Shown here piece by piece: positions 33,341-64,000 of a stretch of DNA of 64,000 bases. The stretch is from Macrostomum lignano (taxonomy: Eukaryota). Numbering within the stretch: position 1 is the stretch's first letter; the number at the start of each line of letters is the position of its first letter. The stretch lies in the NCBI GenBank assembly GCA_002269645.1, contig NIVC01000035.1, positions 372,001 to 436,000 on the forward strand, in the 5' to 3' direction. The translations under genes were made by a program, and so were the position numbers. Under the pieces are notes generated by a model, which saw only the letters and a program-made list of their open reading frames with translations, had not been told where the DNA came from and made no database searches.

Positions 33341-33375
<35 letters not shown>

Positions 33376-33393
33376 GCAGGCAGACAGACAGGC

Positions 33394-33433
<40 letters not shown>

Positions 33434-33449
33434 GGATAGACAGACAGAA

Positions 33450-33492
<43 letters not shown>

Positions 33493-33493
33493 A

Positions 33494-33552
<59 letters not shown>

Positions 33553-33597
33553 CAGGCAGAAAGACAGACAGACAAACAGACAGACAAGCAGGCAGAA

Positions 33598-33650
<53 letters not shown>

Positions 33651-33653
33651 GGC

Positions 33654-33694
<41 letters not shown>

Positions 33695-33874: not shown

Positions 33875-34474
33875 TTCAACTATCACGTGCAGACTCTCAG
33901 TTTGGACAGACAGATTGAAAGCAAAATGATTGCCTTTTTCTGTGGCTTGCGTCTTGCTTGAAGTTGTCTGGTCAGCAATTGCCCTAGGCCCCTATATATA
34001 TAAATGCGTTTTGATTATTGAAAAATTTACTGTATACTCCATTGTTTGTTGAGAATGGAAAGTTGGTTATATTTATTAACTGTTGTCAAGTTCAATTGTT
34101 TTAAATTCAAAATTCTGGCCTCTTTTCTCTTTTACGTTGTATTTATCAAATTTTATAGTCAGATTCTGAAGAAGTTTTGATAGGTTGAGTAAGCGCGTCT
34201 CAATTCTTGTGCCACACCAAAAGCCTTGGTTCAATTCCACGTGTAGAACAACATTTATTTGGGGCTAGTGTGCACGAAGTTTTGGCAGCGGTGGTGGGGT
34301 GAGGCTTTGTCCTTCGAGCCGCAAAGGGCCAGCCCCCAACGCACTGAGAGTGTACATTCCTGACGATTAGAAAGTCAAAAAGGGCCAGTGTACACACTGT
34401 GCAAACACTGTACACACTACACACTGTGTACACACTGCACACACACAAAAATGTGCAAAATTTTCCTTGGTTGT

Positions 34475-36360: not shown

Positions 36361-36884
36361 AAGTACTAGAATATATTAAATTGTAGTTACGAGCGTAACT
36401 TTTTTATAAGCTTTCGATACCCCGTGGCTTCACTGTTTTGTGTGCAATATCAAATTTTCAACGAAAACAATGATTTTGAATTTTTTAGCCTAATAATGCA
36501 TATAAGAAATGCATATTGATGTAAATAATAAGTCACCGGCTTTTGATCTCAAATCCACCTATATTTATTCGCAATAGCTCATTCAAATTTCTTTGGGTCA
36601 CTCGCTACAATTTTTGCACTTTTTCAACTGCAATGCCTATTATTGTGTAATTCCATTGCATTGTCAGAACGTTCTTGCAATTTTTATAGGGTCTCTTTTT
36701 GTGAGGATGTTTTTGGATAATATAATAATGTTAATATACTCATAAATTAGAAGATTTTTGTTTTAATTGTCCCGTCAGCTGTGTAAACTCATGTACATGC
36801 ATCTTTCAGCTGTCGTGGCGGCTTATTATTTGTGATTTACAGATGATGTAGGTTGCAAATCCCCCCTTTGTCTCCTAAGACACA

Positions 36885-40890: not shown

Positions 40891-40966
40891 CATAACTCAT
40901 CAACACTCATCTCCTGTGTGTTCTCCAAACTTGCTGCCTCTAATCAATCCGATCGCATACAACAGC

Positions 40967-43900: not shown

Positions 43901-46900
43901 ACTCTGAACCAACCCTGAACCAAATCTTAACCAACCCTGAACCAACCCTAAACCAACTCTTAATCAACTCTGAACCAACCCTGAACCAACTCTGAACCAG
44001 CTCTGAACCAGCCCTGAACCAACCCTGAACCAACCCTGAACCAACCCTGAACCAACCCTGAACCAATCCTGAACCAATCCTGAACCAACTCTGAACCAAC
44101 TCTGAACCAACCCTGAACCAACTCTGAACCAACCCTGAACCAACTCTTAACCAACCCTGAACCAACCCTGAACCAGACCTGAACCAACCCTGAACCAGCC
44201 CTGAACCAACTCTGAACCAACCCTGAATCAACCCTGAACCAACTCTGAACCAACCCTGAATTAGCTCTGAATCAACCGTGAACCAACCCTGAATCAACCC
44301 TGAACCAACCCTGAATTAACTCTGAATCAACCGTGAACCAACCATGAACCAACCCTGAACCAACTCTGAACCAACCCTGAATCAACTCTGAATCAACCCT
44401 GAATCAACTCTGAATCAACTCTGAATCAACCGTGAACCAACACTGAGACAACCCTAAATCAACCCTGAACCAACCCTAAACCAACTCTAAACCAACCCTG
44501 AACCAACTCTGAACCAACCCTGAATCAACTCTGAATCAACTCTGAATCAACCGTGAACCAACCCTAAACCAACCCTGAACCAACCCTGAACTAACCCTGA
44601 ACCAGCCCTGAATCAACTCTGAATCAACTCTGAATCAACCGTGAACCAACCCTAAACCAACCCTGAACCAACCCTGAACTAACCCTGAACCAGCCCTGAA
44701 CCAACCCTGAACCCACACCCGAAGGTGGGTCGCGCGGGCTCCGAGGAGCTGCTGGTGTGGGCTCGGTCTGCTGACTGCCCCCTTACAGACGAGTCGGCCA
44801 TCTCGGCGGATGTGGCCACCGCCAACAGCATTCTGCACCTGGTGCACACCATCAAGACTCTCGAATCCGAGGAGCAACAGTTGAAGCTGCGAATATCGGC
44901 CGGCCGAGACGAGTGCAAACGCCTGCTCAGAGACGGTCGCAAAGACAAAGCTCTTGTTGTTATGCGACGGACCAAAGCGACTGAGACTCTGCTGGACGAG
45001 CGGAAACAGCAGCTGATGAATCTGGACCGGATGCTCATACAGGTTCAGATGGCTAACAGTAATAAGCAGGTGAGTAGCGGTGGCCTGAGTTTGCCCTCAA
45101 ACGCCAAAATTTTCCTAACGGCTCAAAATCAGTTTTGATCCTCCAAGAATCACCTCTGACCCCCAAGAATTGCCTCTGATCCTCATCCCCAATAATACTC
45201 TTTGGTCCTCCAAGAATCGCCTCTGATCCCCATCCCCAATAATCACCTTTGGTCCTCCAAGAATCGCCTCTGATCCCCATCCCCAATAATCACCTTTGGT
45301 CCTCCAAGAATCGCCTCTGATCCCCATCCCCAATAATACTCTTTGGTCCTCCAGGAATTGCCTCTGATCCCCATCCCCAATAATACTCTTTGGTCCTCCA
45401 GGAATTGCCTCTGATCCCCATCCCCAATAATACTCTTTGGTCCTCCAAGAATCGCCTCTGACCCTCATCCCCAATAATACTCTTTGGTCCTCCAAGAATT
45501 GCCTCTGATCCCCATCCCCAATAATCACCTTTGATCCTCCAAGACCCAATAAAAGAATCGCCTCTGACTCCAATAAAAGAATCGCCTCTGACCCAATAAA
45601 AGAATCGCCTCTGACCCAATAAAAGAATCGCCTCTGGTCCCTTTAAAGAACTGCCTCTGATCCCAATAAAGAATCGCCTCTGATCCCAATAAAAGAATCG
45701 CCTCTGACCCCAATAAAGAATCGCCTCTGATCCCAATAAAGAATCGCCTCTGACCCAATAAAAGAATCGCCTCTGACCCTAATAAAAGAATCGCCTCTGA
45801 CCCTAATAAAAGAATCGCCTCTGACCCAATAAAAGAATCGCCTCTGACCCAATAAAAGAATCGCCTCTGACCCAATAAAAGAATCGCCTCTGGTCCCTTT
45901 AAAGAATTGCCTCTGATCCCAATAAAGAATCGCCTCTGATCCCAATAAAAGAATCGCCTCTGACCCCAATAAAGAATCGCCTCTGATCCCAATAAAGAAT
46001 CGCCTCTGACCCAACAAATGAATCGCCTCTGACCCAATAAAAGAATCGCCTCTGACCCAATAAAAGAATCGCCTCTGACCCAATAAAAGAATCGCCTCTG
46101 ATCCCAATAAAAGAATCGCCTCTGACCCCAATAAAGAATCGCCTCTGATCCCAATAAAGAATCGCCTCTGACCCAATAAAAGAATCGCCTCTGATCCCAA
46201 TAAAGAATCGCCTCTAACCCAACAAATGAATCGCCTCTGACCCAATAAAAGAATCGCCTCTGACCCAATAAAAGAATCGCCTCTGACCCAATAAAAGAAT
46301 CGCCTCTGACCCAATAAAAGAATCGCCTCTGATCCCAATAAAGAATCGCCTCTGATCTCAATAAAGAATCGCCTCTGACTCCAATAAAAGAATCGCCTCT
46401 GACTCCAATAAAAGAATCGCCTCTGACCCAATAAAAGAATCGCCTCTGACCCTAGTAAAAGAATCGCCTCTGACCCAATAAAAGAATCGCGTCTGACCCA
46501 ATAAAAGAATCGCCTCTGACCCTAATAAAAGAATCGCCTCTGACCCAATAAAAGAATCGCCTCTGACCCAATAAAAGAATCGCCTCTGGTCCCTTTAAAG
46601 AATTGCCTCTGATCCCAATAAAGAATCGCCTCTGATCCCAATAAAAGAATCGCCTCTGACCCCAATAAAGAATCGCCTCTGATCCCAATAAAAGAATCGC
46701 CTCTGATCCCAATAAAAGAATCGCCTCTGACCCCAATAAAGAATCGCCTCTGATCCCAATAAAAGAATCGCCTCTGACCCAATAAAAGAATCGCCTCTGA
46801 CTCCAATAAAAGAATCGCCTCTGACCCAATAAAAGAATCGCCTCTGACCCAATAAAAGAATCGCCTCTGACCCAATAAATGAATCGCCTCTGACCCAATA

Positions 46901-49877
46901 AAAGAATCGCCTCTGACCCAATAAAAGAATCGCCTCTGACCCAATAAAAGAATCGCCTCTGACCCAATAAAGAATTGCCTCTGATCCCAATAAAGAATCG
47001 CCTCTGATTCCAATAAAAGAATCGCCTCTGACCCCAATAAAGAATCGCCTCTGATCCCAATAAAAGAATCGCCTCTGATCCCAATAAAAGAATCGCCTCT
47101 GACCCCAATAAAGAATCGCCTCTGATCCCAATAAAAGAATCGCCTCTGACCCCAATAAAGAATCGCCTCTGATCCCAATAAAGAATCGCCTCTGACCCAA
47201 TAAATGAATCGCCTCTGACCCAATAAAAGAATCGCCTCTGACCCAATAAAAGAATCGCCTCTGACCCAATAAAAGAATCGCCTCTGACCCAATAAAAGAA
47301 TCGCCTCTGACCCTAATAAAAGAATCGCCTCTGATCCCAATAAAAGAATCGCCTCTGACCCCAATAAAAGAATCGCCTCTGATCCCAATAAAAGAATCGC
47401 CTATGATCCCAATAAAGAATCGCCTCTGACCCAATAAAAGAATCGCCTCTGACCCAATAAAAGAATCGCCTCTGACCCAATAAAAGAATCGCCTCTGACC
47501 CAATAAAAGAATCGCCTCTGACCCTAATAAAAGAATCGCCTCTGATCCCAATAAAAGAATCGCCTCTGATCCCAATAAAAGAATCGCCTCTGACCCCAAT
47601 AAAAGAATCGCCTCTGATCCCAATAAAAGAATCGCTTCTGATCCCAATAAAAGAATCGCCTCTGACCCCAATAAAGAATCGCCTCTAACCCAATAAAAGA
47701 ATCGCCTCTGACTCCAATAAAAGAATCGCCTCTGACCCAATAAAAGAATCGCCTCTGACTCCAATAAAAGAATCGCCTCTGACCCAATAAAAGAATCGCC
47801 TCTGACCGAAAAAAAGAATCGCCTCTGACCCCAATAAAGAATCGCCTCTGATCCCAATAAAGAATCGCCTCTGACCCAATAAATGAATCGCCTCTGACCC
47901 AATAAAATAATCGCCTCTGACCCAATAAAAGAATCGCCTCTGACCCAATAAAAGAATCGCCTCTGACCCAATAAAAGAATCGCCTCTGACCCTAATAAAA
48001 GAATCGCCTCTGATTCCAATAAAAGAATCGCCTCTGACCCCAATAAAAGAATCGCCTCTGATCCCAATAAAAGAATCGCCTCTGACCCCAATAAAAGAAT
48101 CGCCTCTGATCCCAATAAAAGAATCGCCTATGATCCCAATAAAGAATCGCCTCTGACCCAATAAAAGAATCGCCTCTGACCCAATAAAAGAATCGCCTCT
48201 GACCCAATAAAAGAATCGCCTCTGACCCAATAAAAGAATCGCATCTGACCCAATAAAAGAATCGCCTCTGACCCTAATAAAAGAATCGCCTCTGATCCCA
48301 ATAAAAGAATCGCCTCTGACCCCAATAAAAGAATCGCCTCTGATCCCAATAAAAGAATCGCCTCTGACTCCAATAAAAGAATCGCCTCTGATCCCAATAA
48401 AAGAATCGCCTCTGACCCCAATAAAAGAATCGCCTCTGATCCCAATAAAAGAATCGCCTCTGACTCCAATAAAAGAATCGCCTCTGACCCAATAAAAGAA
48501 TCGCCTCTGACCCTAATAAAAGAATCGCCTATGATCCCAATAAAGAATCGCCTCTGACCCAATAAAAGAATCGCCTCTGACCCAATAAAAGAATCGCCTC
48601 TGACCCAATAAAAGAATCGCCTCTGACCCAATAAAAGAATCGCCTCTGACCCAATAAAAGAATCGCCTCTGACCCTAATAAAAGAATCGCCTCTGATCCC
48701 AATAAAAGAATCGCCTCTGACCCCAATAAAAGAATCGCCTCTGATCCCAATAAAAGAATCGCTTCTGATCCCAATAAAAGAATCGCCTCTGACCCCAATA
48801 AAGAATCGCCTCTGACCCAATAAAAGAATCGCCTCTGACTCCAATAAAAGAATCGCCTCTGACCCAATAAAAGAATCGCCTCTGACTCCAATAAAAGAAT
48901 CGCCTCTGACCCAATAAAAGAATCGCCTCTGACCGAATAAAAGAATCGCCTCTGACCCAATAAAAGAATCGCCTCTGACCCAATAAATGAATCGCCTCTG
49001 ACCCAATAAAAGAATCGCCTCTGACCCAATAAAAGAATCGCCTCTGACCCAATAAAAGAATCGCCTCTGACCCAATAAAAGAATCGCCTCTGACCCAATA
49101 AATGAATCACCTCTGACCCAATAAAAGAATCGCCTCTGACCCAATAAATGAATCGCCTCTGACCCAATAAAAGAATCGCCTCTGACCCAATAAAAGAATC
49201 GCCTCTGACCCAATAAATGAATCGCCTCTGACCCAATAAATGAATCGACTCTGACCCAATAAATGAATCGACTCTGACCCAATAAAAGAATCGCCTCTGA
49301 CCCAATAAAAGAATCGCCTCTGACCCAATAAATGAATCGCCTCTGACCCAATAAATGAATCGCCTCTGACCCAATAAATGAATCGCCTCTGACCCAATAA
49401 AAGAATCGCCTCTGACCCAATAAAAGAATCGCCTCTGACCCCATGTAAAATCACCCTGCCCCGCAGGTGCTGGACGCATTCAAGGTCACCAGAGACTGGT
49501 TCAAAACCTCGCAAGCAGCGGAGGCTGACTCTCACGAGGCCGCTCACGAAGCTCTGGGCGAAATTCGCGACGTCCTCGACGAGCAGCGCGAATTGGCTGA
49601 CGCCCTCGCCTACTCGCCTGGCGCTGAAGGCCTGGACGATAGCGAGCTGGAGTCCGAGCTGGACAAGCTGCTTTTAGAAGAAGCGGAACAGCCAGACTCT
49701 GCAGCCGGCAATTCTACTAAGCGGAAGAAGCCGGCAGCGGCCGACGCCGAATTGGATGCCAAATTTTCCGAACTCGACGTTGACAGCCTGCAGCTGCCCG
49801 ACGTGTCCGACCTGCCGCTGCCGCACAGCCCCAACGTGTCCCTTGACGAGTTGAAGAAGCGACTGCAGGCGCTTTGA
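40967..49877 (+). CDS. CHMP7: Charged multivesicular body protein 7 (ESCRT-II/III hybrid, ~509 aa)
   Basis: Exons 40967-41361, 42038-42254, 42900-43061, 44725-45069, 49467-49877 sum to 1530 nt with consistent phases. N-terminal LPPEWSDDEAVYPLFQAFKRPRAVDPDSFDRKMKFWSRLL is the CHMP7 winged-helix signature. Followed by an Snf7-like coiled coil (GRKDKAL..NLDRML..QVLDAFK) and an acidic tail. Confidence 0.93.
41385..42016. repeat. 24-bp minisatellite (ggatgactgactcacctgacaccc), CHMP7 intron 1
   Basis: About 26 units. Confidence 0.96.
42315..42830. repeat. 11/22-bp degenerate repeat (ctactgacatattagtgacatt), CHMP7 intron 2
   Basis: Recurring tgaca every ~11 bp. Confidence 0.88.
43228..44712. repeat. 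10-bp tandem repeat (ctgaaccaac/cctgaaccaa), CHMP7 intron 3
   Basis: About 148 units, running up to ~12 bp before the acceptor. Confidence 0.96.
45135..45545. repeat. 47-bp minisatellite, 5' part of CHMP7 intron 4
   Basis: cctcca recurs at 45301 and 45348. Shares gaatcgcctctga..cccaata with the downstream 23-mer. Confidence 0.92.
45545..49442. repeat. 22-24-bp minisatellite (aataaaagaatcgcctctgaccc), CHMP7 intron 4
   Basis: About 165-170 units, nearly all containing AATAAA on the sense strand. Confidence 0.97.
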
Positions 49878-49959
49878 GCTGCCGTGTTGGGTTTGATCGG
49901 ATGCTCAGCACTCATTCACTTCACTTCTGGCTTGGCTTTTGCTTCCTTCTTGATCTCCA

Positions 49960-49987
49960 CCTCCCCTCTCCCTCTCTTCCACTCCCC

Positions 49988-50020
<33 letters not shown>

Positions 50021-50053
50021 CTCTCCCTCTCCCCTCCCTCTCTTCCACTCCCC

Positions 50054-50088
<35 letters not shown>

Positions 50089-50121
50089 CTCTCCCTCTCC
50101 CCTCCCTCTCTTCCACTCCCC

Positions 50122-50158
<37 letters not shown>

Positions 50159-50194
50159 CTCTCCCTCTCCCCTCCCTCTCTTCCACTCCCCCTT

Positions 50195-50226
<32 letters not shown>

Positions 50227-50258
50227 CTCTCCCTCTCCCCTCCCTCTCTTCCACTCCC

Positions 50259-50316
<58 letters not shown>

Positions 50317-50575
50317 CCCTCTCCCCTCCCTCTCTTCCACTCCCCCTTTCTCCCCTCTCCCACTCTCCCCCTCTCCCTCTCCCTCTCTCCCTCTCCTTCT
50401 CCCTCTCTCCCTCTCCTTCTCCCTCTCTTCCACTCCCCTGTCTCCCCTCTCTCCCACTCTCCCTCTCCCACTCTCCCTCTCCCTCTGTCCCTCTCCCTCT
50501 TCCTTTCTCTCTCTCTCTCTTCCTCTTTCCCTCCCTCTCCCTCTCTCACTCTCTCCCTCCACTCTCCAGCTCTCA
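49960..50575. repeat. CT-rich compound microsatellite 3' of CHMP7
   Basis: (ct)n blocks alternating with ctcttccactccccctttct. Confidence 0.93.
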
Positions 50576-51104
50576 TTTAGCTCTGCTTGCTTGTCCCTAG
50601 TCCCTCTCTTAAATTTCCTCTTTACATTTCTCATTGCTGTGTAAGCAGGCGTTAACTTTGTAGAGCGTGCGCACCATCGATAATTAATAGTCGGGGATAC
50701 ATCAGTGAATAAACAGATTCACAAATTTCATGTTCATGCTTGATGGATCCAGCACTCCATTCTAAACTAATAATAAACTGGCCCGGATCGTTTAATCCAG
50801 AAAAATGTTTCTAATTTTGTTCCTGTTCCACTGTGTAGGCACATCTACAATCGCAATTGTTATTTCTTATAAAAACTTAATTAAATACTCCTACTTTAAG
50901 TAGGCTAGAAAAATGCGCGTAAATTATTTTTTTCTGTTTTCGAACCCAACAGTGATTAAGTATAACAAATAAATATTCAGTCAGTTGGTCAACTGCGCAC
51001 TATTAATTTTTTGCGCTAAAGCCAATTAAAAATGTACAAAACTGAAATTTCACTACTGACTTCCATCACTACTGAAATCACTGCAGCCGCCTTGCTGGAC
51101 AAGC

Positions 51105-51742: not shown

Positions 51743-52599
51743 ATATTCATCAGTTACTAGAAATATGAGTTTAGCATAGGCGACCATGCTTTGGTGGAGC
51801 TATCCGATTCAGATGTAATCAGGGATATCCGTGTATTCGCCATTGTGTGCCGGCAAGAGACATATTGCTTGTCTATTTTTACATCTCGTAATCACTTGAA
51901 ATTTACGAAAAGGAATGTTCGTTGGCAGTGACTAATTGAATCTACTTATCCTAGGAAATATAATTGAAGCCAGAATGAAGCTGTGTTCAGCTGCAGAACC
52001 TAAAATTCTAGTTCCGGCTGTTACAACACAACGCAACCAACAACGTGCAATGACTTGTTCTCCATGTCATGTCAATGGCGATGAGTATTGCACATTGATG
52101 CTTACCAGCAACGGAAGTATAGGGTTGGATCCTGGTGAAGCTATACTATTTTTGTCAAATATTGTTACGGATAATATTCTCATATCATTTGGACCTACTC
52201 CCGTGCGAACCTCCTTCCTTCAACATTCTTGTTTCAGTGAGTTCTCAGCCGATCTATGATGAGATTGAAAATATTCTAGTTTCACCTCCACCACAACCTC
52301 ACCTCCACCTAAACCACAACCTCGACCACAACCTCAGCCTCAACCACCAACTGCACAACCACATTGGCAAGCATATCCAAAGCGTAACGTCTGTAAAGGT
52401 TTCTGCAACTGCTTCAAAAGCAGAAATTGCGCCTGGTCTTTGGTTGCATTTCTTCTTCATTTGCTGTTGGCCTGTTGTCTGACATTGACCGTAGTGCTTT
52501 TTGGCCCGCTGCGGCTGTTAAAGGATAATGGACTGGTGAGCTGACACTGAAAATGGTAAAAGAAAGGTATTTTAGGCGAAAGAAAATATATTTTCAGCT

Positions 52600-53712
52600 A
52601 AAAATTCTGCAAATTCTAGATAATAAATTCTGAGATTCTTGGCAGAAAATTCTGTAGATTCTGGGCAGAAAATTCGGCAGCTTCTAGGCAGAAAATTTGG
52701 CAGCTTCTGGGCAGAAAATTCTGTAGATTCTGGGCAGAAAATTTGGCAGATTCTATGCAGAAAATTCGGCAGATTCTGGGCAGAAAATTTGGCAGCTTCT
52801 GGGCAGAAAATTCGGCAGATTCTGGGCAGAAGTACTGCAGATTCTGGGCAGAAAATTTGGCAGATTCTGGGCAGAAAATTTGGCAGATTCTATGCAGAAA
52901 ATTCGGCAGATTCTGGGCAGAAAATTTGGCAGATTCTGGGCAGAAGTACTGCAGATTCTGGGCAGAAAATTTGGCAGATTCTGGGCAGAAAATTCGGCAG
53001 CTTCTAGGCAGAAAATTTGGCAGCTTCTGGGCAGAAGTACTGCAGATTCTGGGCAGAAAATTCGGCAGATTCTGGGCAGAAAATTCGGCAGATTCTGGGC
53101 AGAAAATTCGGCAGATTCTGGGCAGAAAATTCGGCAGATTCTGGGCAGAAAATTCGGCAGCTTCTGGGCAGAAAATTTGTCAGATTCTGGGCAGAAACTT
53201 CTGTAGATTCTGGGCAGAAGTACTGCAGATTCTGGGCAGAAAATTTGGCAGATTCTGGGCAGAAGTACTGCAGATTCTGGGCAGAAAATTTGGCAGATTC
53301 TGGGCAGAAGTACTGCAGATTCTGGGCAGAAAATTTGGCAGATTCTGGGCAGAAAATTCGGCAGCTTCTGGGCAGAAAATTTGGCAGATTCTGGGCAGAA
53401 AATTTGGCAGATTCTGGGCAGAAAATTCGGCAGATTCTGGGCAGAAAATTCGGCAGATTCTGGGCAGAAAATTCGGCAGATTCTGGGCAGAAAATTCGGC
53501 AGATTCTGGGCAGAAAATTCGGCAGATTCTGGGCAGAAAATCGGCAGCTTCTGGGCAGAAAATTCTGTAGATTCTGGGCAGAAAATTTGGCAGATTCTGG
53601 GCAGAAAATTCGGCAGATTCTGGGCAGAAGTACTGCAGATTCTGGAAAGAAAATTCGGCAGATTCTTGGTATAAAATTTAAGTAGTTTCAAAGCAGAAAC
53701 TTCGGCAGATTC
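52600..53712. repeat. 23-bp minisatellite (gggcagaaaattcggcagattct)
   Basis: About 48 units. Paralogous to 57440-58130. Confidence 0.95.
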
Positions 53713-54375
53713 ATTGCAATGAGGGGGATAGACTTGGGATTGAGAATTGAAAATTCAGGAAAGAGAGGAAGAAAGATTCATGGGGGAGGGGCAAAAATGA
53801 AGGTAATTATGGACAGACATAGCAGACCAACGCTAATTATGTGCTGTTCCTGATTCATCAGCTAATTACCTACGTGCCTACGTGTATTCAGTAACTATAG
53901 AAAACTCCTCCCACACCAACATGGCACAGGTACGAGTATCACAAGAGTGGATCAACTTGTCGTCGAAATTCGAGTCTACAACCCCATGGTTCGTGACTGT
54001 AAGTTCATTTGCTAGACAAATGAAATGCTTACATGTACTCGAAATTAACGTCTATATTAGGATATTTTCTTGGCCTGAAGCCGAACTTCCATATTTTCTG
54101 GCGTACATTTATTTATAGCCAGCTAGTTATTTTTGCGAGATGTTTTTTTTTGAAAGACGATTCTACGAGCGTAATTGTTGTAAACATGAAACCGTGGCTC
54201 TCTGCCTGCGTACGCGATGTGGTTCCTAATTATTAATCTAGAATATACACATGCACATAAATCTATATTTAGTCATTTGTTTCATACTGTTTATAACACA
54301 CTTACTTAATTAAAGTGCGAAGGTAGAGAGTGGAAGTAGAGGAAATTGAGGTAGAGGGCGGGGTAGAGGGGCGGT

Positions 54376-55542
54376 GTTAGGCTTTCTGTTCTCCGGGGTC
54401 TTAATTTATCCGGGGGACACTGCAAAGCAAAATTATTGTCGCTTTGCGATAACCTACCCTGGATAATCCAAGGCACAACAAAATCGGGCTTTGAAATATC
54501 CTGGGTCTTAAATTGTCCGGGGTGAATAAAGATTGGTGGTCAAGTTATTTACCTGATAAAGCGCATGTGAATGGGGCAGGACATCATTTCGAGAGAATGG
54601 GGCTGACTCAGAGGCCAGGGAAGGGCCCTGACTGCACCTTAGACAGGGGAGGGGCAGATGAGGTGCAGTCTAAGAATAAATCGATAATGGACTGGCGTCA
54701 CATTGCTAGCACTACAAGCGTACGTGCAATGAAGATGAGTGTACGAGCTAATAGCACACAAGGGAAAGTGTTGCGCAAATTACGAGTATATTACACGTAA
54801 CTTTTAAGATATACAGAGTTTATTTCTTGTCGAAGTTCTAAGTTCAGGAAAATTTATCTCTCGATGGCTAAAGTATCGCTGAACCAAGTGTTCTTTATGT
54901 TTTGAACGAGTATGTTGAGCTTCCGGAAAATTCCAGTACGAAAGAGAGAGATAATCTAAAAAGAAAAATGAGAGAAAAGAGCAAAAACTTCACGCTTCAT
55001 TCAGCGGATGGCCTGTTTTTGATTGATCGAATTACATGTATGAATAGATTGGTGAATCAAGTAACAGTTTTTCGGCTGACAATGTATAGTATCAATAGCT
55101 TTAATTTTGCTTCTGTTTGGAGTGTGAAATGCAAGATAGTGATTGAAAATACACTCGGTTAAATAAGCATGACGCAGATGTTTGCCAATTGAAAAAGTAG
55201 CAAAAATGTTTTCTTACTTTGCCTTTCCTAACCCCGGATATCAGTAGCCGGATGTCCTAAAGCAAACCTCTGTCTCCGCAGACTGACCCCTCTCTTTCAA
55301 CCTACAGTCGGATGTCCTACGACAACTTCCCCTTCTTGTGATCTCCGGGCCGGATAGCAGAGTCAGTGCCGTAGGATGTCCGGGAGAGACATCTCAAAGT
55401 GCCCGGACAATGCAAAGCAGCTCAAGATATCCGGTTAGGAGAAAACAAAGCAGGCTTTTTGCTTGGCAGTATCCGGGCGGATATCGTAAGTGCGTTCGGA
55501 TATCCGGGCCAGACAAAAAAACCCCGGAAAGTCTAAACTGTA
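54376..55542. mobile_element. Probable DNA transposon/MITE inserted in the pseudogene intron
   Basis: Absent from the paralogous intron at 58670-58960. Right end (rc) TA|CAGTTTAGACTTTCCGGGGT, left end degenerate ttaggctttc..ccggggt. Many ccggata/tccggg subterminal motifs. Weak integrase-N-terminus-like peptide at ~54865-55020. Confidence 0.5.
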
Positions 55543-55799
55543 ACAGCGGAGATAGAGAGGGTACATGCAGAGGGCGGGGGTAGAGGCGGATATAGAGGTT
55601 AGAGATGGAGGGCTGGAGGTAGCTTGTAGTAGGTGTGGGGCAGTGTACATCTGCCTCCATCTCTCCCTCTAATTTCCCCTCTCTGTCTCGCTCACTTGGT
55701 CCGGCGTTATAACTGCACCGTACAACAGCAAAAACAACAAAAGCAACAAAGACAACAACAAAAAACAACAAAAACAGCAACAACAACAGCAACAACAGC

Positions 55800-56042
55800 A
55801 ACTGGTTACGGTCGAGGCGCTGCAGCTCCGCTGTGTGGCCTCCCGGGTCACAGGCGTCATGAACCGCGTGCTCGTCGGCGCTCCTGCGCCCACCACCGAG
55901 TGGACCGTCGCGCACATCGTGCCGATCCCGAAGAAGGCATTGACAACGCGGAAAGAAGACCACCGCGGGATCTCGCTGATGTCCTGCACCCCGAAGCTCT
56001 TCAACCGGCTTCTGCTCGATCGTCTGCAGTCGGTGCTGGACC
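55800..56042 (+). mobile_element. Internal fragment of a non-LTR retrotransposon reverse transcriptase (RTE-like)
   Basis: VTVEALQLRCVASRVTGVMNRVL..EWTVAHIVPIPKKALTTRKEDHRGISLMSCTPKLFNRLLLDRLQSVLD matches the LINE RT domain 0-1 pattern W..A.IVPIPKK...(N/D)YRGISL.S..K.(F/Y)NR.L..RL. Confidence 0.8.
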
Positions 56043-56138
56043 GGAGATAGAGGGGTTAAAAGTAGAAGGGCCGAGGTAGACATAATGAAGGTATAAAACC
56101 GAGAAGTCTAATTGCACTCTGTAAAACATGAAGCGTGG

Positions 56139-56310
56139 CACACACCCTCAATTACCCCAGCTAATGCTGGCACCCATTTTACAGCTGGGTGAACTGAAGC
56201 AATGCAAAAGTTAAGTGTCTTTCTCAAGAATACAAGTTGTTCTAGTGCGATCGGAAATCGAACCCCCAACCATCAAGTCGTGAGTCCGATGCTCTCACCA
56301 CTAGGCTACA
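56139..56310 (-). mobile_element. tRNA-derived SINE with a CORE/MIR-like central region
   Basis: On the minus strand: A box TGTAGCCTAGTGG at the 5' end (56310) and B box GGTTCGAT (~56265-56258). The body resembles the MIR/CORE motif cccattttacag..aactgag..gttaagtgacttgcccaag. A second copy lies at 4916-5035. Confidence 0.8.
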
Positions 56311-56715
56311 AACCCTCACTCAAAATGAGATCACGCAAGTGTAACTAATGATTGTATGTTATCATACTCGAAATTCTATTAATTCTTTTTGAAATTGAAA
56401 CCACCTGGTGCCTAAAATAGCGGCTAGAAAACCTATTTTTATTCTATTTTTATCTAGTAGAAGTTTAAGAAAAGGATGTCACTCTGGAATCTTACTTGGA
56501 TAAGCTACCTGAGCCAATTAAATTTATTTATTCTATGAAATATAACAGGAGCCAGAATTAACTGCGCCCACTAAGCTAATGTTAAGCTGCCGGACTAATA
56601 GGAACACCTGGACTCTACTTCTGCTGTTTCACTCGCAATGGCTTGTTCTCATTCTCAATGTCGTGTCAGTAGCGGTCATGCGTATTGCACATTGGTGCCT
56701 ACAATTGACGGCATT

Positions 56716-59540
56716 ATGATGGTGGATCCTGGTATGAAACCAGTTATTATTGCATAAAACTATATTCTCATACCGTCACGAACTACATGTAGATAACTCC
56801 CGTCCGAACCTCTTTCAACTCTCCCGTTACAGTGACTTCGGAGCCGGAATATGTAGAGATTGAAAAAATTACTCCAGCTTCACCTCCGCCGCGACCGCCG
56901 AGACACGGAAAAACGTCACCTCCGCAAACTCCACCACAACCTCCACCTAAACCTAGACCACAACCTCCACCTAAACCTAGACCACAACCTCCACCTAAAC
57001 CTAAACCACAACCTCCACCTAAACCTATACCACAACCTCCACCTAAGCCACAACCTCGACCACAACCTCGACCACAACCTCGACCACAAACTCCACCACA
57101 ACCTCAACCACAACCTCAACCACAACCTCGACCACAACCTCGACCACAACCTCAACCACAACCTCGACCACAACATCCACCACCTACTGCACAACCACAT
57201 TGGCAAGCATATCCAAAGCGTAACGTCTGTAAAGGTTTCTGCAACTGCTTCAAAAGCAGAAATTGCGCCTGGTCTTTGGTTGCATTTTTTCTTCATTTGC
57301 TGTTGGCCTGTGGTCTGACATTGACCGTAGTGCTTTTTGGCCCGCTGCGGCTGTTAAAGGATAATGGACTGGTGAGCTGACACTGAAAATGGTAAAAAGA
57401 ATGGGATTTTAGGCGAAAGAAAATATATTTTCAGCTAAAAATTCTGCAAATTCTAGATAATAAATTCTGAGATTCTTGGCAGAAAATTCTGTAGATTCTG
57501 GGCAGAAAATTCTGTAGATTCTTGGCAGAAAATTCTGTTAGATTCTTGGCAGAAAGTTCTGTAGATTCTGGGCAGAAAATTCTGTAGATTCTTGGCAGAA
57601 AATTCTGTAGATTCTTGGCAGAAAATTCTGTAGATTCTGGGCAGAAAATTCTGTAGATTCTGGGCAGAAAATTCTGTTAGACTCAAGGCAGAAAATTCTG
57701 TAGATTCTTGGCAGAAAATTCTGTAGATTCTGGGCAGAAAACTCTGTAGATTCTTGGCATAAAGTTCTGTAGATTCTGGGCAGAAAACTCTGTAGATTCT
57801 TGGCATAAAGTTCTGTTAGATTCTTAGCAGAAAGTTCTGTAGATTCTGGGCAGAAAATTCTGTAGATTCTGGGCAGAAAATTCTGTTAGACTCAAGGCAG
57901 AAAATTCTGTAGATTCTTGGCATAAAGTTCTGTAGATTCTGGGCAGAAAACTCTGTAGATTCTTGGCATAAAGTTCTGTTAGATTCTTGGCAGAAAGTTC
58001 TGTAGATTCTGGGCAGAAAATTCTGTAGATTCTGGGCAGAAAATTCTGTTAGACTCAAGGCAGAAAATTCTGTAGATTCTGGGCAGAAAATTCTGTAGCT
58101 TCTAGGCAGAAAATTCTGCAAAATTTACTACGATTTAGTCTACGGCAGATTCATAGTAATGAAGGGATAGATTCGTCATGGAAAATTGAAAAATTCAGGG
58201 AAGAATGAAAGGAATATTTAGTGGACGAAAATTAGGATAATTATATAGACAGACGAAGTTAACTAAAGCTAATCATGTGTTGTTCCTGATTCATTAGTTA
58301 GCTAACTATTCAGTAGAAAACTCCCCCACACCAACACGGCGCAGGTACGAGTATCACAAGAGTGGATCAACTTGTCGTCGAATTTCGAGTCTCCAAGCCT
58401 CACGGGTCTTGGCTGTAAGTCCATTTGCCGGGCATATGAATTGCTTACTCAGCAATTACGTCTATAGTATACAATTATTTTCTTGGCCTGAACTTCCATA
58501 TTTTCTGGCGTACATTTAGCCAGCAAATTGTTTAACAAAACTGGTCTTTCGTCAACCGTCAATGTTTGACATAAACACATGAAGCCGCTACTTTGCCAGT
58601 CTGAATTATACCCGTGCACAAAAATTATATTTAGTCATTCAATTCACTGTTTATAGCACACTTACTTGAAGTGCGAAGGTAGAGGAGTGAAGATAGAGGG
58701 TGAAGGTAGATTTAGAAGGCGGGGTAGAGGACAGAGGTATAGAGGGGCGAAGATAGAGAGGGTGTAGTTAGAAGGGCGGAAGTAAAGGGCGGAGGTAGAG
58801 AGCGGAGATGGAGGGGGCGGAGATAGTGGGGGTGTAGTTAGAAGGGTGAAGGTAGAGGGCGGAGGTAGATTGTGGACTTACGAGCGTAGAAGGGCGGAGG
58901 TAGATATAATGAAGGTATAAAATATGAGATGCCCAATTGCACTTTGCAAAACACGAAGCCCGACAGCCGGGAACTACAAGCAACTTTTTCAACTGAAGCC
59001 AAACTATTTTCAGTACAAACTCGCTGCTAAGCCAAACAAAGATTGATTGCTCACCTGCCAATGCCCCAACTTCAGCCGTGAACTTCGCCGCAATCGACCC
59101 GTCTATTAAGATGGTCAAGATTGAAGAGGACGAAAACGGCCAAAGAAGCAAAATACTCATCAAACAGGGTGGTCTGTTCCGCATCAATTTCAATGTGAGT
59201 AGAAGCTCAACCTCACTGAAAGTAGCAGATCTTATTTGATTCTTATCTGATTTATATTTAGTCATTAATTAAAAAGACCTTATATTTCCAGGTAAATTTT
59301 GATTGCAAGAACGGCGTAACTACTGTTCAATCGAGAGTTCAATATTCGACGCCGAAGCATCAGGAGTCCCAAAAACTGCACGAGTGCATGCGAAAATGGA
59401 TTGGTCAGTCAAGCCGCGATTTAATTGTGTGCAGTTTCAGCATAGTTCGTCCACTAACGGTCAATAGTTGGCTGCAGTTGCAGTTTTCTAGATATAACTG
59501 CAAAAATAACTTTACTGTAAGCTTGGAGAGAATGGTTTAA
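56716..59540 (+). CDS. Type II membrane TNF-like ligand with a proline-rich cytoplasmic tail; one apparent 1-nt frameshift
   Basis: Exons 56716-56731, 56833-57371, 58317-58344, 58967-59194, 59292-59540 have consistent phases if one extra A at ~59038-59040 is removed. No signal peptide. PPPKP/PQP tail and a single TM (AWSLVAFFLHLLLACGLTLTVVLF). C-terminal beta-rich domain with SKILIKQGGLFRINFN|VNF and VCSFSIVRPLTVNSWLQLQF, a TNF homology domain-like strand pattern. Family assignment by motif only. Confidence 0.6.
57440..58130. repeat. 23-bp minisatellite (ggcagaaaattctgtagattct[t/g])
   Basis: About 30 units in intron 2 of the TNF-like gene. Confidence 0.95.
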
Positions 59541-59654
59541 CAAATTTTTGCATTCGTGAATTGTGCCATATAAGCCTTAAAGAGAAATAGATTTACAGCC
59601 AGAGTCCCAGTCAGCCAGCCCACTTATCTGCCCACTTATCACTGACTCTTTTTA

Positions 59655-59935
59655 AATTCTAAAGACTTCCTCAGCCCCGTCTTGCCCCACCCCTCCACTA
59701 GAGCGTCTCCTTCCTACCCCACCGTACATTCATTTAATAGCTGCGTACAAACCCGCCCCTCCTTTTAAAGCGCCCACCCCAATTTTCTCGTCCTCTCGTC
59801 TTTATACCACTTCAAATTCTAAAGATTTTCTCACCCCTGCTTGCTCACCTCCTCACTAGAGCGTCGCCTTCCTACCCCTCACTGTACATTCATCCAATGG
59901 CTGTGTACAAATCCACCCTCCCCTTAAAGCCCCCC
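59655..59935. repeat. Imperfect ~160-bp tandem duplication
   Basis: ttctaaaga..cactagagcgtc.ccttcctacccc..gtacattcat occurs at ~59657 and ~59816. Confidence 0.7.
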
Positions 59936-60099
59936 ACTAATCTCCTCATCAAATTAGCTATTTAACTCAATTTGTATTTCATCAGTGTACATTTTTCTCC
60001 AGTGAGTGTACTGCTTAAAAATCGTTAATTGTCGACAGTTACTTATGCTTTAGATATCAAAGTGCTTATCAATTAACACTTTATAGTTAACATTAACAA

Positions 60100-60850
60100 T
60101 GTCCATGTCCTACCCGTTTTGCCTGCTGAGTTTTATTGACCATGCTTGTATATAACAGGCGCTTGTATTTTTCATCATGCAGGTATTCGTGAAATGAACT
60201 CAGTTCAGAGCGCGTTAAATTCCTAAATATCATTTTTGTGCTTAATTTTTGCAGTAAAATATTTTTGTACACACAATTGGCTTTCATTCATGTTTTGAGC
60301 TACTTTGAGTAGGTTAATTCTGTTTACCGCTAAAATCATCTGAATACATCTAAATACATTTTGTAACTGCTTGTTGTTGTTTAAATTTATTTTTTCTCAA
60401 GGCGTTTGTTACCTTATCATTATCTCAATGGCGCAATTGTGTCATGGAAAAGTACAATTATAGAATCATTATCATGAATCTTGTAGCAGCAGCCAAAACA
60501 CGTGATCCAATGGTTACTAAGCAAGTATTGCATTGGAGTGAATCATCCAAACCCGATAGCCCAAAAGCAGCGCATAGTTTACATTCGAAAGATTTGAAAA
60601 TACAGTGTGGCATCGAAACGGAGTTATAAAAACCGAAAATAGCTTCTTTAAATACTTGGTAAGCTTTTTGGCATCCTTGGCAGTAGTTTCTTATCTAGCC
60701 CAACAGATCAAAGCAAACGTTGGCAGCAAGACTTTGCAAATTGGCAACACAGTTTTATTAGTATACGGTGGTTTTGCTTGGTTGAATCAAAAGAGAAGGT
60801 CAATAGTCCATTTTTCAACTTCATTGAACCTAACGATGTACTAATATGTA
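60100..60850 (-). mobile_element. Possible highly decayed LINE (CR1/L2-like) 3' remnant
   Basis: Stop-interrupted minus-strand peptides (KTVLPICKVLLPTFALICW; AFGLSGLDDSL; FRNLTRSELSSFHEYL) loosely resemble the post-RT region of CR1/L2 ORF2. Weak. Confidence 0.25.
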
Positions 60851-61094
60851 ACGGAAGTCTAGCCTTTAAAGTCAACAATTTTTAAACATTTATTTTCCTT
60901 TTCTTACTACTGGCTTGAGTAGACAGTTCAGAGTGCAAAAATACAGCTATTTTTATTAACAGACAGCCAATCAGAATTGAAGCCATCTTTAATATAAATA
61001 TTGCATCTTTACACGGATTTATCTTAGCAAAGATTTTAGTAACTGCTACAGTCCTACAATTACATTGAGCCTCACATGCGCTGACTTAACTACA

Positions 61095-63403
61095 ATGGCT
61101 AATAATACAGTAAAGTTCAGCAAAGAGCAGGACAATGTATACTTCACCATAGTATCGCTGACCGGTGAACAATCGCAGCCGTCACCGCAGCTGCCTGCCC
61201 CAGGTACCAGCAATGAACTTCCGCCTTCAATTCTCTTGTCGTCATCGCCAATTCCAGAAGCCTCTACGTCACATGGCCGCCGGTTCGAGCAGAATCGACA
61301 GGCAAAAACTCGGATGACCTCAAGTAGAGGTTCGCAGAGGTCTTCGTCGTTCTTTGCCAGACGGCAGAAGCAGCAACACCAGGAGCAGCAGCAGATGAAA
61401 CAGCAGTCTAGTCTGCGCCAGCAGGATAAACGAGGTGCCCGGACTCCTTCGTCGAGACAATCGTCGGGAACTCGAAGGTCTGGAAAGTCTCGAAGCAGTG
61501 CTCGAAATTCGCAGGAGCGTCGCCAGCTGTCAATCATCAATACCACATCCTTCATCGTGTTCATGGCCAACCTACTGGCAACCATGGCTGTCCTGGCCAT
61601 GTTCTCGTCTGACTTCGCTGCCCTGACTGCTGCAGGCGGGGAGCCCAGCGATGAAGCTGAAAGTGAACAGGTATTTAGTCTGATTTGTTTTGGGGAGGGA
61701 GCTAGGGAGAGACAGGCGTTGCGAGGAAGAGAGGGGAGAGGAGAGGAAGAGTGGGAGAGAGGGAGAGTGGGAGAGAGGGAGAGTAGGAGAGAGGGAGAGT
61801 GGGAGAGAGGGAGAGTGGGAGAGAGGGAGAGTGGGAGAGAGGGAGAGTGGGAGAGAGGGAGAGTGGGAGAGAGGGAGAGTGGGAGAGAGGGAGAGTGGGA
61901 GAGAGGGAGAGTGGGAGAGAGGGAGAGTGGGAGAGAGGGAGAGTGGGAGAGAGGGAGAGTGGGAGAGAGGGAGAGTGGGGGAAAGGGAGGTGGGGGAAAG
62001 GAGAGAGTAGGGAGAGAGGAGAGAGAGTAGAGGGAGAGGGAGAGAGGAGAGAGGGGGAGAGAGAGAGAGAGAGAGGGGTAGAGGAAGAGAGGGGTAGAGG
62101 AAGAGAGGGGTAGAGGAAGAGAGGGGTAGAGGAAGAGAGGGGTAGAGGAAGAGAGGGGTAGAGGAAGAGAGGGGTAGAGGAAGAGAGGGGTAGAGGAAGA
62201 GAGGGGTAGAGAGGAAGAGGAGGAGGTAGAGGAGAGAGAGGGAAGAGAGAGAGGAAGAGAGGGGTAGAGGAAGAGAGGGGAGAGGAGAGAGAGGGAGAGA
62301 GAGAGGAAGAGAGGGGGAGAGAGAGAGAGGGGAGAGGGAGAGAGGGGGAGAGGAGAGGGGGAGAGAGAGAGGGAGAGAGGAGGGAGAGGACAGAGAAGGA
62401 GAGAGAGGGAGGGGGAGAAGACAGAGAAGGAGAGAGAGGGAGGGGGAGAAGACAGAGAAGGAGAGAGAAGGAGAGAGGGGGAGAGGACAGAAAAGGAGAG
62501 AGAGAGGGAGAGAGGGGGAGAGGACAGAGAAGGAGAGAGAGAGGGAGAGAGGGGGAGAGGACAGAGAAGGAGAGAGAGGGAGAGAAGGGGAGAGGACAGA
62601 GAAGTGAGCATGCAGTTGTCAATCAGAATGGAATGCCGCACCCGCAGGCTTGGCTCAGTCTGTCAATCGGCAGAAGCCGGATCTGTCAGACAAGCGAGGA
62701 CACAGAATGTCACCGCCAAGATCAAAGCACCTATTTTTCGGGGGGTGAGCATGGTTGCATGTACATATGAATAGTTTTTATGCCCTAAAATCAATTCATA
62801 GTCATATTTCAAGTCTATTGACTTGGGCGTATTCTAACGATTTGAACTTATTTTGTCATTTCTTTTTAAGCGAAGTTGAAAATCTTGTTAGCAAGTTCAG
62901 CTTCAGAAAATCTGGTGTGCAAAATTCAAGAAATTTTTAAGTAAATTGCTGCACTGATTGCAATCTGTCTTTGACCAGAATTTTAGTAGAGAAATCAAAT
63001 GCTTTGCTGGTGTTTAAGGCCAGGCCATATCAATGCTTTCTAGAGGGACAGTAGTGTGCACAAGAGTGCCTATAATGTAGGGTGTGACAAGATCGCCTAT
63101 ACCGTATAGGGTGTGACAAGAGTGCCTATATTGTATGGGGTGTGACAAGAGTGCCTAATGAAGAGTGACGAGGTTCACTACATATTGCTTTTCTGCACAT
63201 CATGAGAACAGTTGCAACCAAACAAAGATCTCCAACTCATCCGCAATCGCATAGTGAACTCAATCGGCCCCCTGACGTGCAGCGACTGGTCTAAGCACTC
63301 TGCCAACTGTGAAAACGGCATCCGTGGTCCTCTGTACAAACTGATTGGCAACTCCAACCGGATCCAGGTTGCTAGGGATGGCTACTACAGGATATACATG
63401 ATG
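61095..63403 (+). CDS. Second type II membrane TNF-like ligand (3' end beyond the window)
   Basis: Exons 61095-61670, 62616-62744, 63212-63403, all phase 0. Basic/Ser-rich cytoplasmic tail, one TM (IINTTSFIVFMANLLATMAVLAMF), RQAR furin-type site before NVTAKI, then CSDW and NRIQVARDGYYRIYMM (TNF/EDA-like IxVxxxGxYxIY strand). Donor gtgaga at 63404. Confidence 0.65.
61735..62602. repeat. Purine-rich compound array (16-bp gggagagagggagagt, then 16-bp gaggggtagaggaaga, then GA-rich)
   Basis: Fills intron 1 of the second TNF-like gene. Confidence 0.93.
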
Positions 63404-63444
63404 GTGAGATGAGATGGACTGCCCTACAGCCTCGGACATACATG

Positions 63445-63950
63445 TACACCTCACTCCACCATGCACCCACCTCACTCCACTATACACCCACCTCACTCCA
63501 CTATACACCCATCTCACTCCGCTATACACCCACCTCACTCCACTATACACCCACCCACTCCACTATACACCCACCTCACTCCTCTATACACCCATCTCAC
63601 TCCGCTATACACCCAACCCACTCCACCGTGCACCCACCTCACTCCACTATGCACTCAACCCACTCCACCGTGCACCCACCTCACTCCACCGTGCACCCAC
63701 CTCACTCCACCTTGCACCCACCTCACTCCACCGTGCACCCACCTCACTCCACCGTGCACCCACCTCACTCCACCTTGCACCCACCTCACTCCACCGTGCA
63801 CCCACCTCACTCCACCGTGCACCCACCTCACTCCACCGTGCACCCACCTCACTCCACTATACACCCACCCACTCCACTATACACCCACCCACTCCACTAT
63901 ACACCCACCACTCCACCATGCACCCACCTCACCCCGCTATACACCCTTCC
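63445..63950. repeat. 21-bp minisatellite (cacccacctcactccaccgtg)
   Basis: About 24 units starting ~40 bp after the donor at 63404. Confidence 0.93.
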
Positions 63951-64000
63951 TCCTCTAAACCTAAAAGTACTTCAGGCTACTTACTACCATATAAAAGTTC

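What the first reader, a model, noticed from the sequence alone, without database searches (positions are those of the whole stretch)
51900..64000. Tandem cluster of highly divergent TNF-like type II ligand genes, largely missed by the ORF track
Hand splicing gives two type II membrane proteins whose C-terminal exons carry TNF-homology-like strands (ILIKQGGLFRINFN|VNF; IQVARDGYYRIYMM|) with an intron at the same position and phase. They also share an F-x(1-3)-L(K/Q)PN...CS segment. A third, truncated copy lies upstream. The two intact-looking genes have unrelated cytoplasmic tails (Pro-rich versus basic/Ser-rich), suggesting a diversifying cytokine locus in an invertebrate. Gene structure is seen in sequence; the TNF assignment is inference from motifs.
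Basis: partly seen in the sequence, partly recalled or inferred. Interest (0 to 1): 0.75.

Follow-up and report, generated by a model that had tools for sequence, protein, structure and literature searches.

The report
Divergent TNF-like membrane ligand genes
The last 12 kb of this eukaryotic window holds one complete gene for a membrane-anchored protein whose outer domain is predicted, at low confidence, to fold like a TNF-family cytokine, plus a broken partial copy and a second, cut-off candidate; it is a modestly interesting new member of a known family.

Summary

Gene A (56638-59540, +) splices with five GT-AG exons into a 386-aa protein with no stops. It has a Pro-rich N-terminal tail, one transmembrane segment, a stalk and a 142-aa beta-rich C-terminal domain.

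- **Sequence tests are negative.** Pfam finds no TNF or C1q domain. PDB sequence search, two word-index searches, an exhaustive phmmer over 1.84 billion proteins and two metagenome scans find no relative.
- **Structure tests are weakly positive.** Two single-sequence AlphaFold models (pLDDT 57 and 47) both retrieve almost only TNF-superfamily ligands from the PDB (EDA, CD40L, 4-1BBL, BAFF, TNF, Eiger). E-values are 3e-3 to 7e-2 and TM-scores 0.4-0.6.

Gene B (61095-window end) is type II and carries a TNF B/C-strand-like motif. Its phase-0 intron falls at the same profile column as in A. Its domain is cut by the window end, and A and B show no significant similarity.

Copy 1 (52050-53998) is a frameshifted 5' duplicate of A that lacks the ectodomain exons.

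Verdict: a probable divergent TNF-like ligand locus, a new member of a known kind.

The parts
56638..56731 (+). Gene A exon 1 (ATG; MACSHSQCRV...MMVDP, phase 1 end)
   Evidence: ATG at 56638, donor G|gtatga
56833..57371 (+). Gene A exon 2: YVEIE motif, about 120-aa Pro-rich repeat (PQPRPQP), Cys-rich juxtamembrane stretch, transmembrane segment LVAFFLHLLLACGLTLTVV
   Evidence: acceptor cccgttacag|, donor CTG|gtgagc; hydropathy 2.42; 12/48-nt coding repeat 56925-57183
58317..58414 (+). Gene A exon 3 (98 nt, stalk; least certain exon)
   Evidence: Only exon choice that joins exon 2 (phase 0) to exon 4 (phase 2) without stops. Predicted disordered.
59014..59194 (+). Gene A exon 4: N-terminal half of the jelly-roll domain, ends ...ILIKQGGLFRINFN, phase-0 donor
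   Evidence: acceptor ctattttcag|, donor AAT|gtgagt; 80-codon open frame against 28 and 38 in the other frames; hhalign to THD columns 41-65
59292..59540 (+). Gene A exon 5: C-terminal half of the domain, VNFDCKNG...FTVSLERMV, stop TAA
   Evidence: acceptor atatttccag|; 92-codon open frame; AF2 strands and Foldseek TNFSF hits
61095..61670 (+). Gene B exon 1: Ser/Arg/Gln-rich tail, transmembrane segment SFIVFMANLLATMAVLAMF, acidic stalk start
   Evidence: ATG 61095, donor CAG|gtattt; hydropathy 2.14, flank charge +2 and -4; TATAAAT at 60993
63212..63403 (+). Gene B candidate ectodomain exon: LQPNKD...W...NRIQVARDGYYRIYMM, phase 0 at both ends; the rest of the gene lies beyond 64000
   Evidence: acceptor gagaacag|, donor ATG|gtgaga; hhalign to THD columns 44-58; 68-codon open frame
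52050..53998 (+). Copy 1: frameshifted 5' partial duplicate of gene A (exon equivalents 52050-52134, 52238-52535, 53901-53998), no exons 4-5
   Evidence: blastn and alignment to gene A. The ATG frame leaves the TM frame inside the contracted Pro repeat, and there is a TGA in the exon-3 equivalent. The duplication ends at 56134, matching 58959.
57462..58118 (.). 23-bp minisatellite in gene A intron 2 (homologous array 52625-53712 in copy 1)
   Evidence: TRF
61723..62595 (.). GA-rich repeat in gene B intron
   Evidence: TRF
63447..63946 (.). 21-bp minisatellite in the gene B intron that runs to the window end
   Evidence: TRF

Best explanation
**Gene A** encodes a type II (signal-anchor) membrane protein. 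Its C-terminal ~120-140 residues most likely fold as a TNF/C1q-superfamily jelly roll of the TNF-ligand type.

By analogy with TNF-superfamily ligands, I infer (none of this is shown) that:
- it trimerises through the beta-sandwich and is displayed on the cell surface;
- it may be shed by cleavage in the disordered stalk;
- it engages a cysteine-rich-domain receptor;
- its long Pro-rich tail, conserved Y-x-E-I-E motif and juxtamembrane cysteines could dock SH3/SH2 proteins or carry palmitate for reverse signalling, as in FasL.

**Gene B**, next door on the same strand, is probably a very old paralogue. It has the same architecture, the same B/C-strand motif and the same phase-0 intron position, but a replaced cytoplasmic tail.

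**Copy 1** is a recent 5' segmental duplicate of A that has decayed into a pseudogene.
For: **Shown**
- A has a stop-free five-exon GT-AG model.
- A and B each have a single transmembrane segment, no signal peptide and a basic N-terminal side.
- The AF2 model of exons 4-5 has pTM 0.54 and 7-8 strands in TNF order.
- Foldseek against the PDB gives CD40L, EDA, 4-1BBL, GITRL, TRAIL, OX40L, APRIL, BAFF, Eiger and LIGHT in the top 50. No C1q entry appears there.
- A second construct reproduces this, with EDA-A1 at E = 3e-3 and TMt up to 0.60.
- BFVD hits are collagen/C1q-type heads.
- A and B both align to THD profile columns 41-65 and 44-58. Both introns fall after column 59, in phase 0.
- Both score in the top 1-2% of their own shuffles against the THD HMM.
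- B keeps counterparts of TNF G54, Y56 and Y59 in the aligned stretch, plus a Trp 31 residues upstream that would match W28 by eye (invariant columns).

**Background**
TNFSF homologues are widespread in invertebrate phyla (bioRxiv 10.1101/2024.07.27.603686).
Against: - No sequence method supports TNF. Pfam is negative and PDB phmmer is negative. hhalign probabilities are 1-4%.
- No homologue of A turned up in 1.84 billion representatives. The three hits are repeat-summation artefacts in two unrelated families.
- Nothing for A or B came from the word-index database or JGI metagenomes.
- Both AF2 models are low-confidence single-sequence models, and Foldseek E-values never fall below 1e-3 in the PDB.
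- Exon 3 is chosen only by frame logic.
- There is no expression evidence.
- No AATAAA or ATTAAA lies within 860 nt after the stop of A.
- The B domain is incomplete, and A-B homology rests on a post-hoc motif plus an intron position.
Confidence: 0.5

Rival explanations
1. The exons are not a functional gene. Gene A is itself a decaying or never-expressed pseudogene, or a chance ORF chain, and the TNF-like fold is an AlphaFold artefact from a beta-prone sequence.
For: - No homologue was found anywhere.
- pLDDT is low.
- The neighbouring copy 1 is demonstrably decayed.
- The locus is full of repeats and retroelement debris.
- There is no polyA signal and no TATA for A.
Against: - Five canonical GT-AG exons give 386 codons without a stop.
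- Exons 4 and 5 have open runs of 80 and 92 codons, against 28-54 in the other frames.
- Two different constructs converge on one specific, topologically complex fold family rather than generic beta hits.
Confidence: 0.25
2. The ectodomain of A belongs to the C1q or another C1q/TNF-superfamily head type (as in collagen-head or spore and phage fibre proteins), not to the TNF ligands proper.
For: - The BFVD search returns collagen-repeat and C1q-domain proteins.
- ExsFA and a phage receptor-binding protein appear in the PDB lists.
- The classical THD sequence signature is absent from A.
Against: - No C1q-family entry appears in either PDB top 50, while nearly all hits are TNFSF ligands.
- There is no signal peptide and no collagen or coiled-coil stalk. 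The architecture is an N-terminal cytoplasmic tail plus a signal anchor, which is the TNF-ligand layout.
Confidence: 0.12
3. Only gene A is TNF-like. Gene B is an unrelated type II membrane protein whose 15-residue GYYRIY motif and exon end match by coincidence, so there is no cluster.
For: - There is no significant A-B similarity in the proposed register.
- The only weak BLASTP hit, E = 0.014, is in another register.
- B against the THD profile gives 1.2 bits and hhalign probability 3.7%.
- The B stretch WSKHSANCENGI also weakly resembles a TSP1-type repeat.
Against: - B has the same strand, adjacency and architecture as A. Its motif falls at the same profile columns, with a phase-0 donor after the same column 59.
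- The Trp and the spacing upstream of the motif fit a THD A-to-C region (inspection).
Confidence: 0.3

Closest known systems
Fas ligand (TNFSF6)
   Same: Type II membrane protein. It has a proline-rich cytoplasmic tail before the transmembrane segment and a C-terminal jelly-roll domain that ends at the C-terminus. The Cys in the C-D loop and a second Cys about 27 residues later resemble the THD disulfide (inference from sequence).
   Different: No detectable sequence similarity. The Pro-rich region of A is about 120 aa of PQPRPQP repeats. An intron splits the C strand. The C-strand Tyr residues are replaced by Phe and Asn in A.
Ectodysplasin A (EDA-A1/A2) and 4-1BBL, GITRL, OX40L (divergent THDs)
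   Same: Best Foldseek matches: EDA-A1 at E = 3e-3, TMt 0.57-0.60; 4-1BBL at 6.5e-3. Like 4-1BBL, GITRL and OX40L, the domain is hard to recognise by sequence.
   Different: There is no collagen stalk as in EDA. Identity is 7-18% over the structural alignments, and the model confidence is low.
Eiger and other invertebrate TNFSF ligands
   Same: Type II layout in a non-vertebrate genome. Eiger structures (6zt0, 6i50) appear among the fold hits. TNFSF is widespread in invertebrates.
   Different: The survey read found invertebrate TNFSF homologues with sequence profiles. Gene A is not found that way: Pfam shows no TNF match at E <= 10.
C1q-domain proteins
   Same: Same fold superfamily. Viral C1q and collagen-head proteins are matched in BFVD.
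   Different: C1q-domain proteins are secreted with a signal peptide and often have a collagen stalk. Here there is a signal anchor and no collagen. No C1q entry appears in the PDB top 50.

Membership tests
TNF ligand superfamily (TNFSF) | Type II topology: cytoplasmic N-terminus, single signal-anchor segment, C-terminal ectodomain | tested here: met
   No hydrophobic N-terminus. One segment with mean hydropathy 2.42 (A) and 2.14 (B), with basic residues on the N-terminal side.
TNF ligand superfamily (TNFSF) | TNF homology domain recognisable by sequence profile (Pfam PF00229 or equivalent) | tested here: not met
   Pfam finds no TNF match at E <= 10 for A, the A domain, B or the B exon. hhalign against a THD profile validated on the PDB gives probabilities of 1.4% and 3.7%.
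TNF ligand superfamily (TNFSF) | Ten-strand jelly-roll fold superposable on known THDs | tested here: inconclusive
   Two AF2 models give nearly pure TNFSF top-50 lists, with E 3e-3 to 7e-2 and TM 0.4-0.6. The models have pLDDT 57 and 47. B could not be tested because its domain is truncated.
TNF ligand superfamily (TNFSF) | Conserved core residues (Trp after strand A; G-x-Y-x-I-Y in strand C; F-x-G in strand H) | tested here: inconclusive
   B has W, G, Y, I, Y in register. A has G, F, I and the Phe after strand C, but lacks both Tyr and the F-G of strand H.
TNF ligand superfamily (TNFSF) | Homotrimer that binds a cysteine-rich-domain receptor | not testable with these tools
   No multimer prediction was available, and no receptor candidate lies in the window.
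C1q domain family | gC1q domain by profile (PF00386) | tested here: not met
   No Pfam match.
C1q domain family | Secreted: N-terminal signal peptide, usually a collagen or coiled-coil stalk | tested here: not met
   The N-termini are hydrophilic and there are no Gly-X-Y repeats. An internal signal anchor is present instead.

The most novel reading that the evidence does not exclude
A and B are founding members of a lineage-specific family of TNF-fold membrane ligands. The family would have diverged beyond all sequence-profile detection. It would keep only the fold, the type II layout and one intron position, and it would swap cytoplasmic tails (Pro-rich SH3-type against basic/Ser-rich). If so, profile-based censuses of invertebrate TNFSF repertoires would miss such loci systematically.
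Probability: 0.3. Interest if true: 0.55.

Novelty: new member of a known kind. Interest (0 to 1): 0.4.

Why it matters
If real, this is a TNF-fold cytokine-like ligand that no sequence method recognises. It sits in a small, rearranging locus with one intact gene, one decayed duplicate and one divergent neighbour.

That would show that surveys of immune and developmental ligands in non-model animals, which rely on Pfam-type profiles, undercount the TNF superfamily. It would also offer a natural example of tail swapping on a conserved extracellular fold.

It does not change what is known about how TNF ligands work.

Tried and rejected
rejected, because every frame has stops.
- **28-nt exon 3 ending at GCAG|gtacga:** rejected. 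It leads through the 58967 acceptor into a frame that stops at 59044.
- **Shared 12-mer CCAAACAAAGAT as evidence of A-B homology:** rejected. It is at chance level and read in different frames.
- **phmmer hits P0001-P0003:** rejected. They are repeat proteins (an Ig-like array, a bacterial repeat array and a discoidin-like array). Each stretch scores about 23-28 bits, and one alignment crosses a repeat boundary.
- **Pfam Cohesin (E = 0.024-0.14, below cut-off):** rejected as noise.
- **TSP1-repeat resemblance of B (E = 0.29-0.47):** noted, not significant.
- **Exact-protein look-ups, tried to extend the contig and name the species:** none on record. The spliced protein was not accepted.
- **Metagenome scans for A and B:** nothing.
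- **Rfam and tRNA scans of the window:** nothing.
- **Including exon 3 in the fold prediction:** it did not add a strand and it lowered confidence.
- **Species identification:** failed. The nearest sequence is an ENA metagenome contig with about 85% aa identity in AP-1 mu.
Full report
**What the window is**

The window is eukaryotic nuclear DNA. It holds spliced housekeeping genes upstream of the finding:
- a SPRY+RING gene at 34-723;
- a PAN-domain exon at 5070-5471 (-);
- TTC39 exons at 12886-15769 (-);
- AP-1 mu at 29055-33860;
- a CHMP7-like Snf7 gene at 40916-49877.

Many introns are filled with minisatellites. The AP-1 mu first exon is 69-70% identical to animal orthologues and 62-67% to fungal ones. 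Animal phyla differ from each other by the same amount, 65-71%. A metazoan host is therefore plausible, but the taxon is not fixed.

The species itself seems absent from the protein collection. The best AP-1 mu match is 87% identical, on an ENA metagenome contig. Exact look-ups failed.

**Gene A (56638-59540, +)**

The 'FQLKPN' string lies in frame 58942, which ends at TGA 59044. The TNF-like strand lies in frame 58940.

A model with canonical GT-AG sites and no stops has these exons:
- 56638-56731
- 56833-57371
- 58317-58414
- 59014-59194
- 59292-59540

It gives 386 aa, arranged as follows:
- a short N-terminus;
- a Y-V-E-I-E motif;
- about 120 aa of PQPRPQP repeats (60 Pro in 150 residues);
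- a Cys-rich basic stretch;
- one transmembrane segment (mean hydropathy 2.42);
- a stalk;
- a 142-aa C-terminal region.

Exon 3 is the weak point. It was chosen because it is the only way to keep the frame.

In the exon 4 and 5 regions the coding frames have open runs of 80 and 92 codons. The other frames have 28-54.

**Copy 1 (52050-53998)**

Copy 1 is a DNA-level duplicate of gene A exons 1-3 and the intron minisatellite. Identity is 66% in exon 1, about 99% across the transmembrane part and 78-86% in the introns. The duplicated unit ends at 56134, which corresponds to 58959, just 5' of exon 4.

Three defects mark it as a pseudogene fragment:
- The ATG frame leaves the Pro/TM frame inside the contracted Pro repeat and then hits stops.
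- The exon-3 equivalent carries +1 and -1 indels and a TGA.
- Exons 4-5 are absent.

**Gene B (61095 to beyond 64000, +)**

Exon 1 (61095-61670) encodes a Ser/Arg/Gln-rich tail and a transmembrane segment (hydropathy 2.14; flank charge +2 and -4). A TATAAAT lies 102 nt upstream of the ATG.

Exon 1 joins in phase 0 to 63212-63403. That exon ends ...NRIQVARDGYYRIYMM at a phase-0 donor. A 21-bp minisatellite then runs to the window end. The rest of the domain cannot be seen.

**Is it TNF-like? Sequence tests**

All sequence tests are negative or sub-threshold.
- Pfam gives no TNF or C1q match at E <= 10 for any construct.
- PDB phmmer gives nothing relevant.
- Word-index searches with A and B give nothing at E <= 1.
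- An exhaustive phmmer of the A domain against 1.84 billion representatives gives three hits. All are long repeat proteins from unrelated families. Each stretch scores about 23-28 bits, so they are summation artefacts.
- JGI metagenome scans give nothing.

It recovers 82 TNFSF sequences in the PDB, including TL1A, LIGHT and APRIL, which were not in the alignment.

Against that profile:
- A scores 4.8 bits and B 1.2 bits. This is reached by 4 and 8 of 500 shuffles respectively.
- hhalign gives P = 0.038 for A and P = 0.012 for B, with probabilities of 1.4% and 3.7%.

These values are not significant. Both proteins do align to the same place, the B/C strands at columns 41-65 and 44-58. In both, the phase-0 donor falls after column 59.

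**Is it TNF-like? Structure tests**

AlphaFold2 without an alignment gave pLDDT 56.8 and pTM 0.54 for exons 4-5. The model has strands in the order expected for a TNF jelly roll.

Foldseek against the PDB returned a top 50 made almost wholly of TNFSF ligands: CD40L, EDA-A1/A2, 4-1BBL, GITRL, TRAIL, OX40L, APRIL, BAFF, LIGHT and Eiger. E-values were 7e-3 to 7e-2 and TM-scores 0.40-0.50. No C1q entry appeared.

A second construct that included exon 3 gave pLDDT 47.2, with the exon-3 part disordered. It again returned TNFSF ligands only. EDA-A1 scored E = 3e-3, with TMt up to 0.60.

In the viral library the hits were collagen-repeat and C1q-type head domains of giant viruses and phages, which belong to the same fold superfamily.

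The models are low-confidence and the E-values are marginal. A TNF-type jelly roll is still a specific and complex topology, and two constructs converge on it. I take that as real but weak support.

**A versus B**

The two genes are not detectably homologous by BLAST in the proposed register. One weak hit, E = 0.014, is in another register. The shared 12-mer is at chance level.

What links them is adjacency, strand, type II layout, the motif and the identical intron position.

**Mechanism (inferred)**

None of these steps is shown; each rests on established knowledge of TNFSF ligands.
- The protein is a surface-displayed, probably trimeric ligand.
- It may be shed at the disordered stalk.
- It binds a cysteine-rich-domain receptor.
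- The Pro-rich tail, the Y-x-E-I-E motif conserved between copy 1 and gene A, and the juxtamembrane cysteines recall FasL-type reverse signalling and palmitoylation.

**Comparison and novelty**

TNFSF ligands are already known across invertebrate phyla: 290 homologues in 148 proteomes (bioRxiv 10.1101/2024.07.27.603686). This would therefore be a new, unusually divergent member of a known kind.

On membership, topology is met, the sequence signature is not met, the fold is inconclusive but positive, and trimer formation and receptor binding are untestable here. I file it as 'works like and probably folds like a TNF ligand', not as a proven TNFSF member.

**Verdict**

Confidence in the TNF-like ligand reading for gene A is about 0.5. 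Interest is 0.4.

Noticed in passing
window 52625-53712 and 57462-58118: The homologous introns of copy 1 and gene A each carry a large 23-bp minisatellite (47.7 and 28.3 copies). The consensus units differ at three positions within four adjacent bases (..TTCGGCAG.. against ..TTCTGTAG..). Each array has therefore been homogenised separately since the duplication.
   Followed up: partly
window 54370-56134: Copy 1 is interrupted, relative to gene A, by a roughly 1.7-kb insertion. It holds a GC-rich fragment resembling the N-terminus of a LINE-type reverse transcriptase (55835-56050 +; Pfam RVT_1 E = 0.072 only) and GGCGGAGGTAGAG-type short repeats that also occur at 58675-58870.
   Followed up: partly
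window 56140-56320: A stretch that looked tRNA-derived or SINE-like by eye follows the end of the duplicated unit. ARAGORN and Rfam found nothing there.
   Followed up: partly
window 52353-52535 vs 57189-57371: The transmembrane and juxtamembrane coding part is about 99% identical between copy 1 and gene A. Exon 1 is only 66% identical and the introns 78-86%. This suggests gene conversion or a very uneven divergence history.
   Followed up: no
window 52250-52270 and 56845-56868: A Y-x-E-I-E motif (IYDEIENI / EYVEIEKI) is conserved at the start of exon 2 in both copies despite the low identity around it. It may be an SH2-type or sorting motif.
   Followed up: no
window 63280-63320: The gene B stretch SDWSKHSANCENGIRG weakly resembles the WSxCSxTCGxG core of thrombospondin type-1 repeats (PDB phmmer E = 0.29-0.47). 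It lacks the first Cys.
   Followed up: partly
window 1-51000: Almost every intron or intergenic stretch holds long tandem arrays, for example 7575-9312, 33060-33918, 34200-36379, 41123-41999, 43464-49547 and 49874-50644. This makes spurious long ORFs on both strands. The CHMP7-like gene spans one such array of about 6 kb.
   Followed up: no
L001 (ENA ERZ25070786 ctg136407l) 9800-12660: A metagenome contig carries an AP-1 mu gene with the same exon boundaries and about 85% aa and 73% nt identity to the window copy. It is therefore a related but different species, and a possible handle on the taxon.
   Followed up: partly
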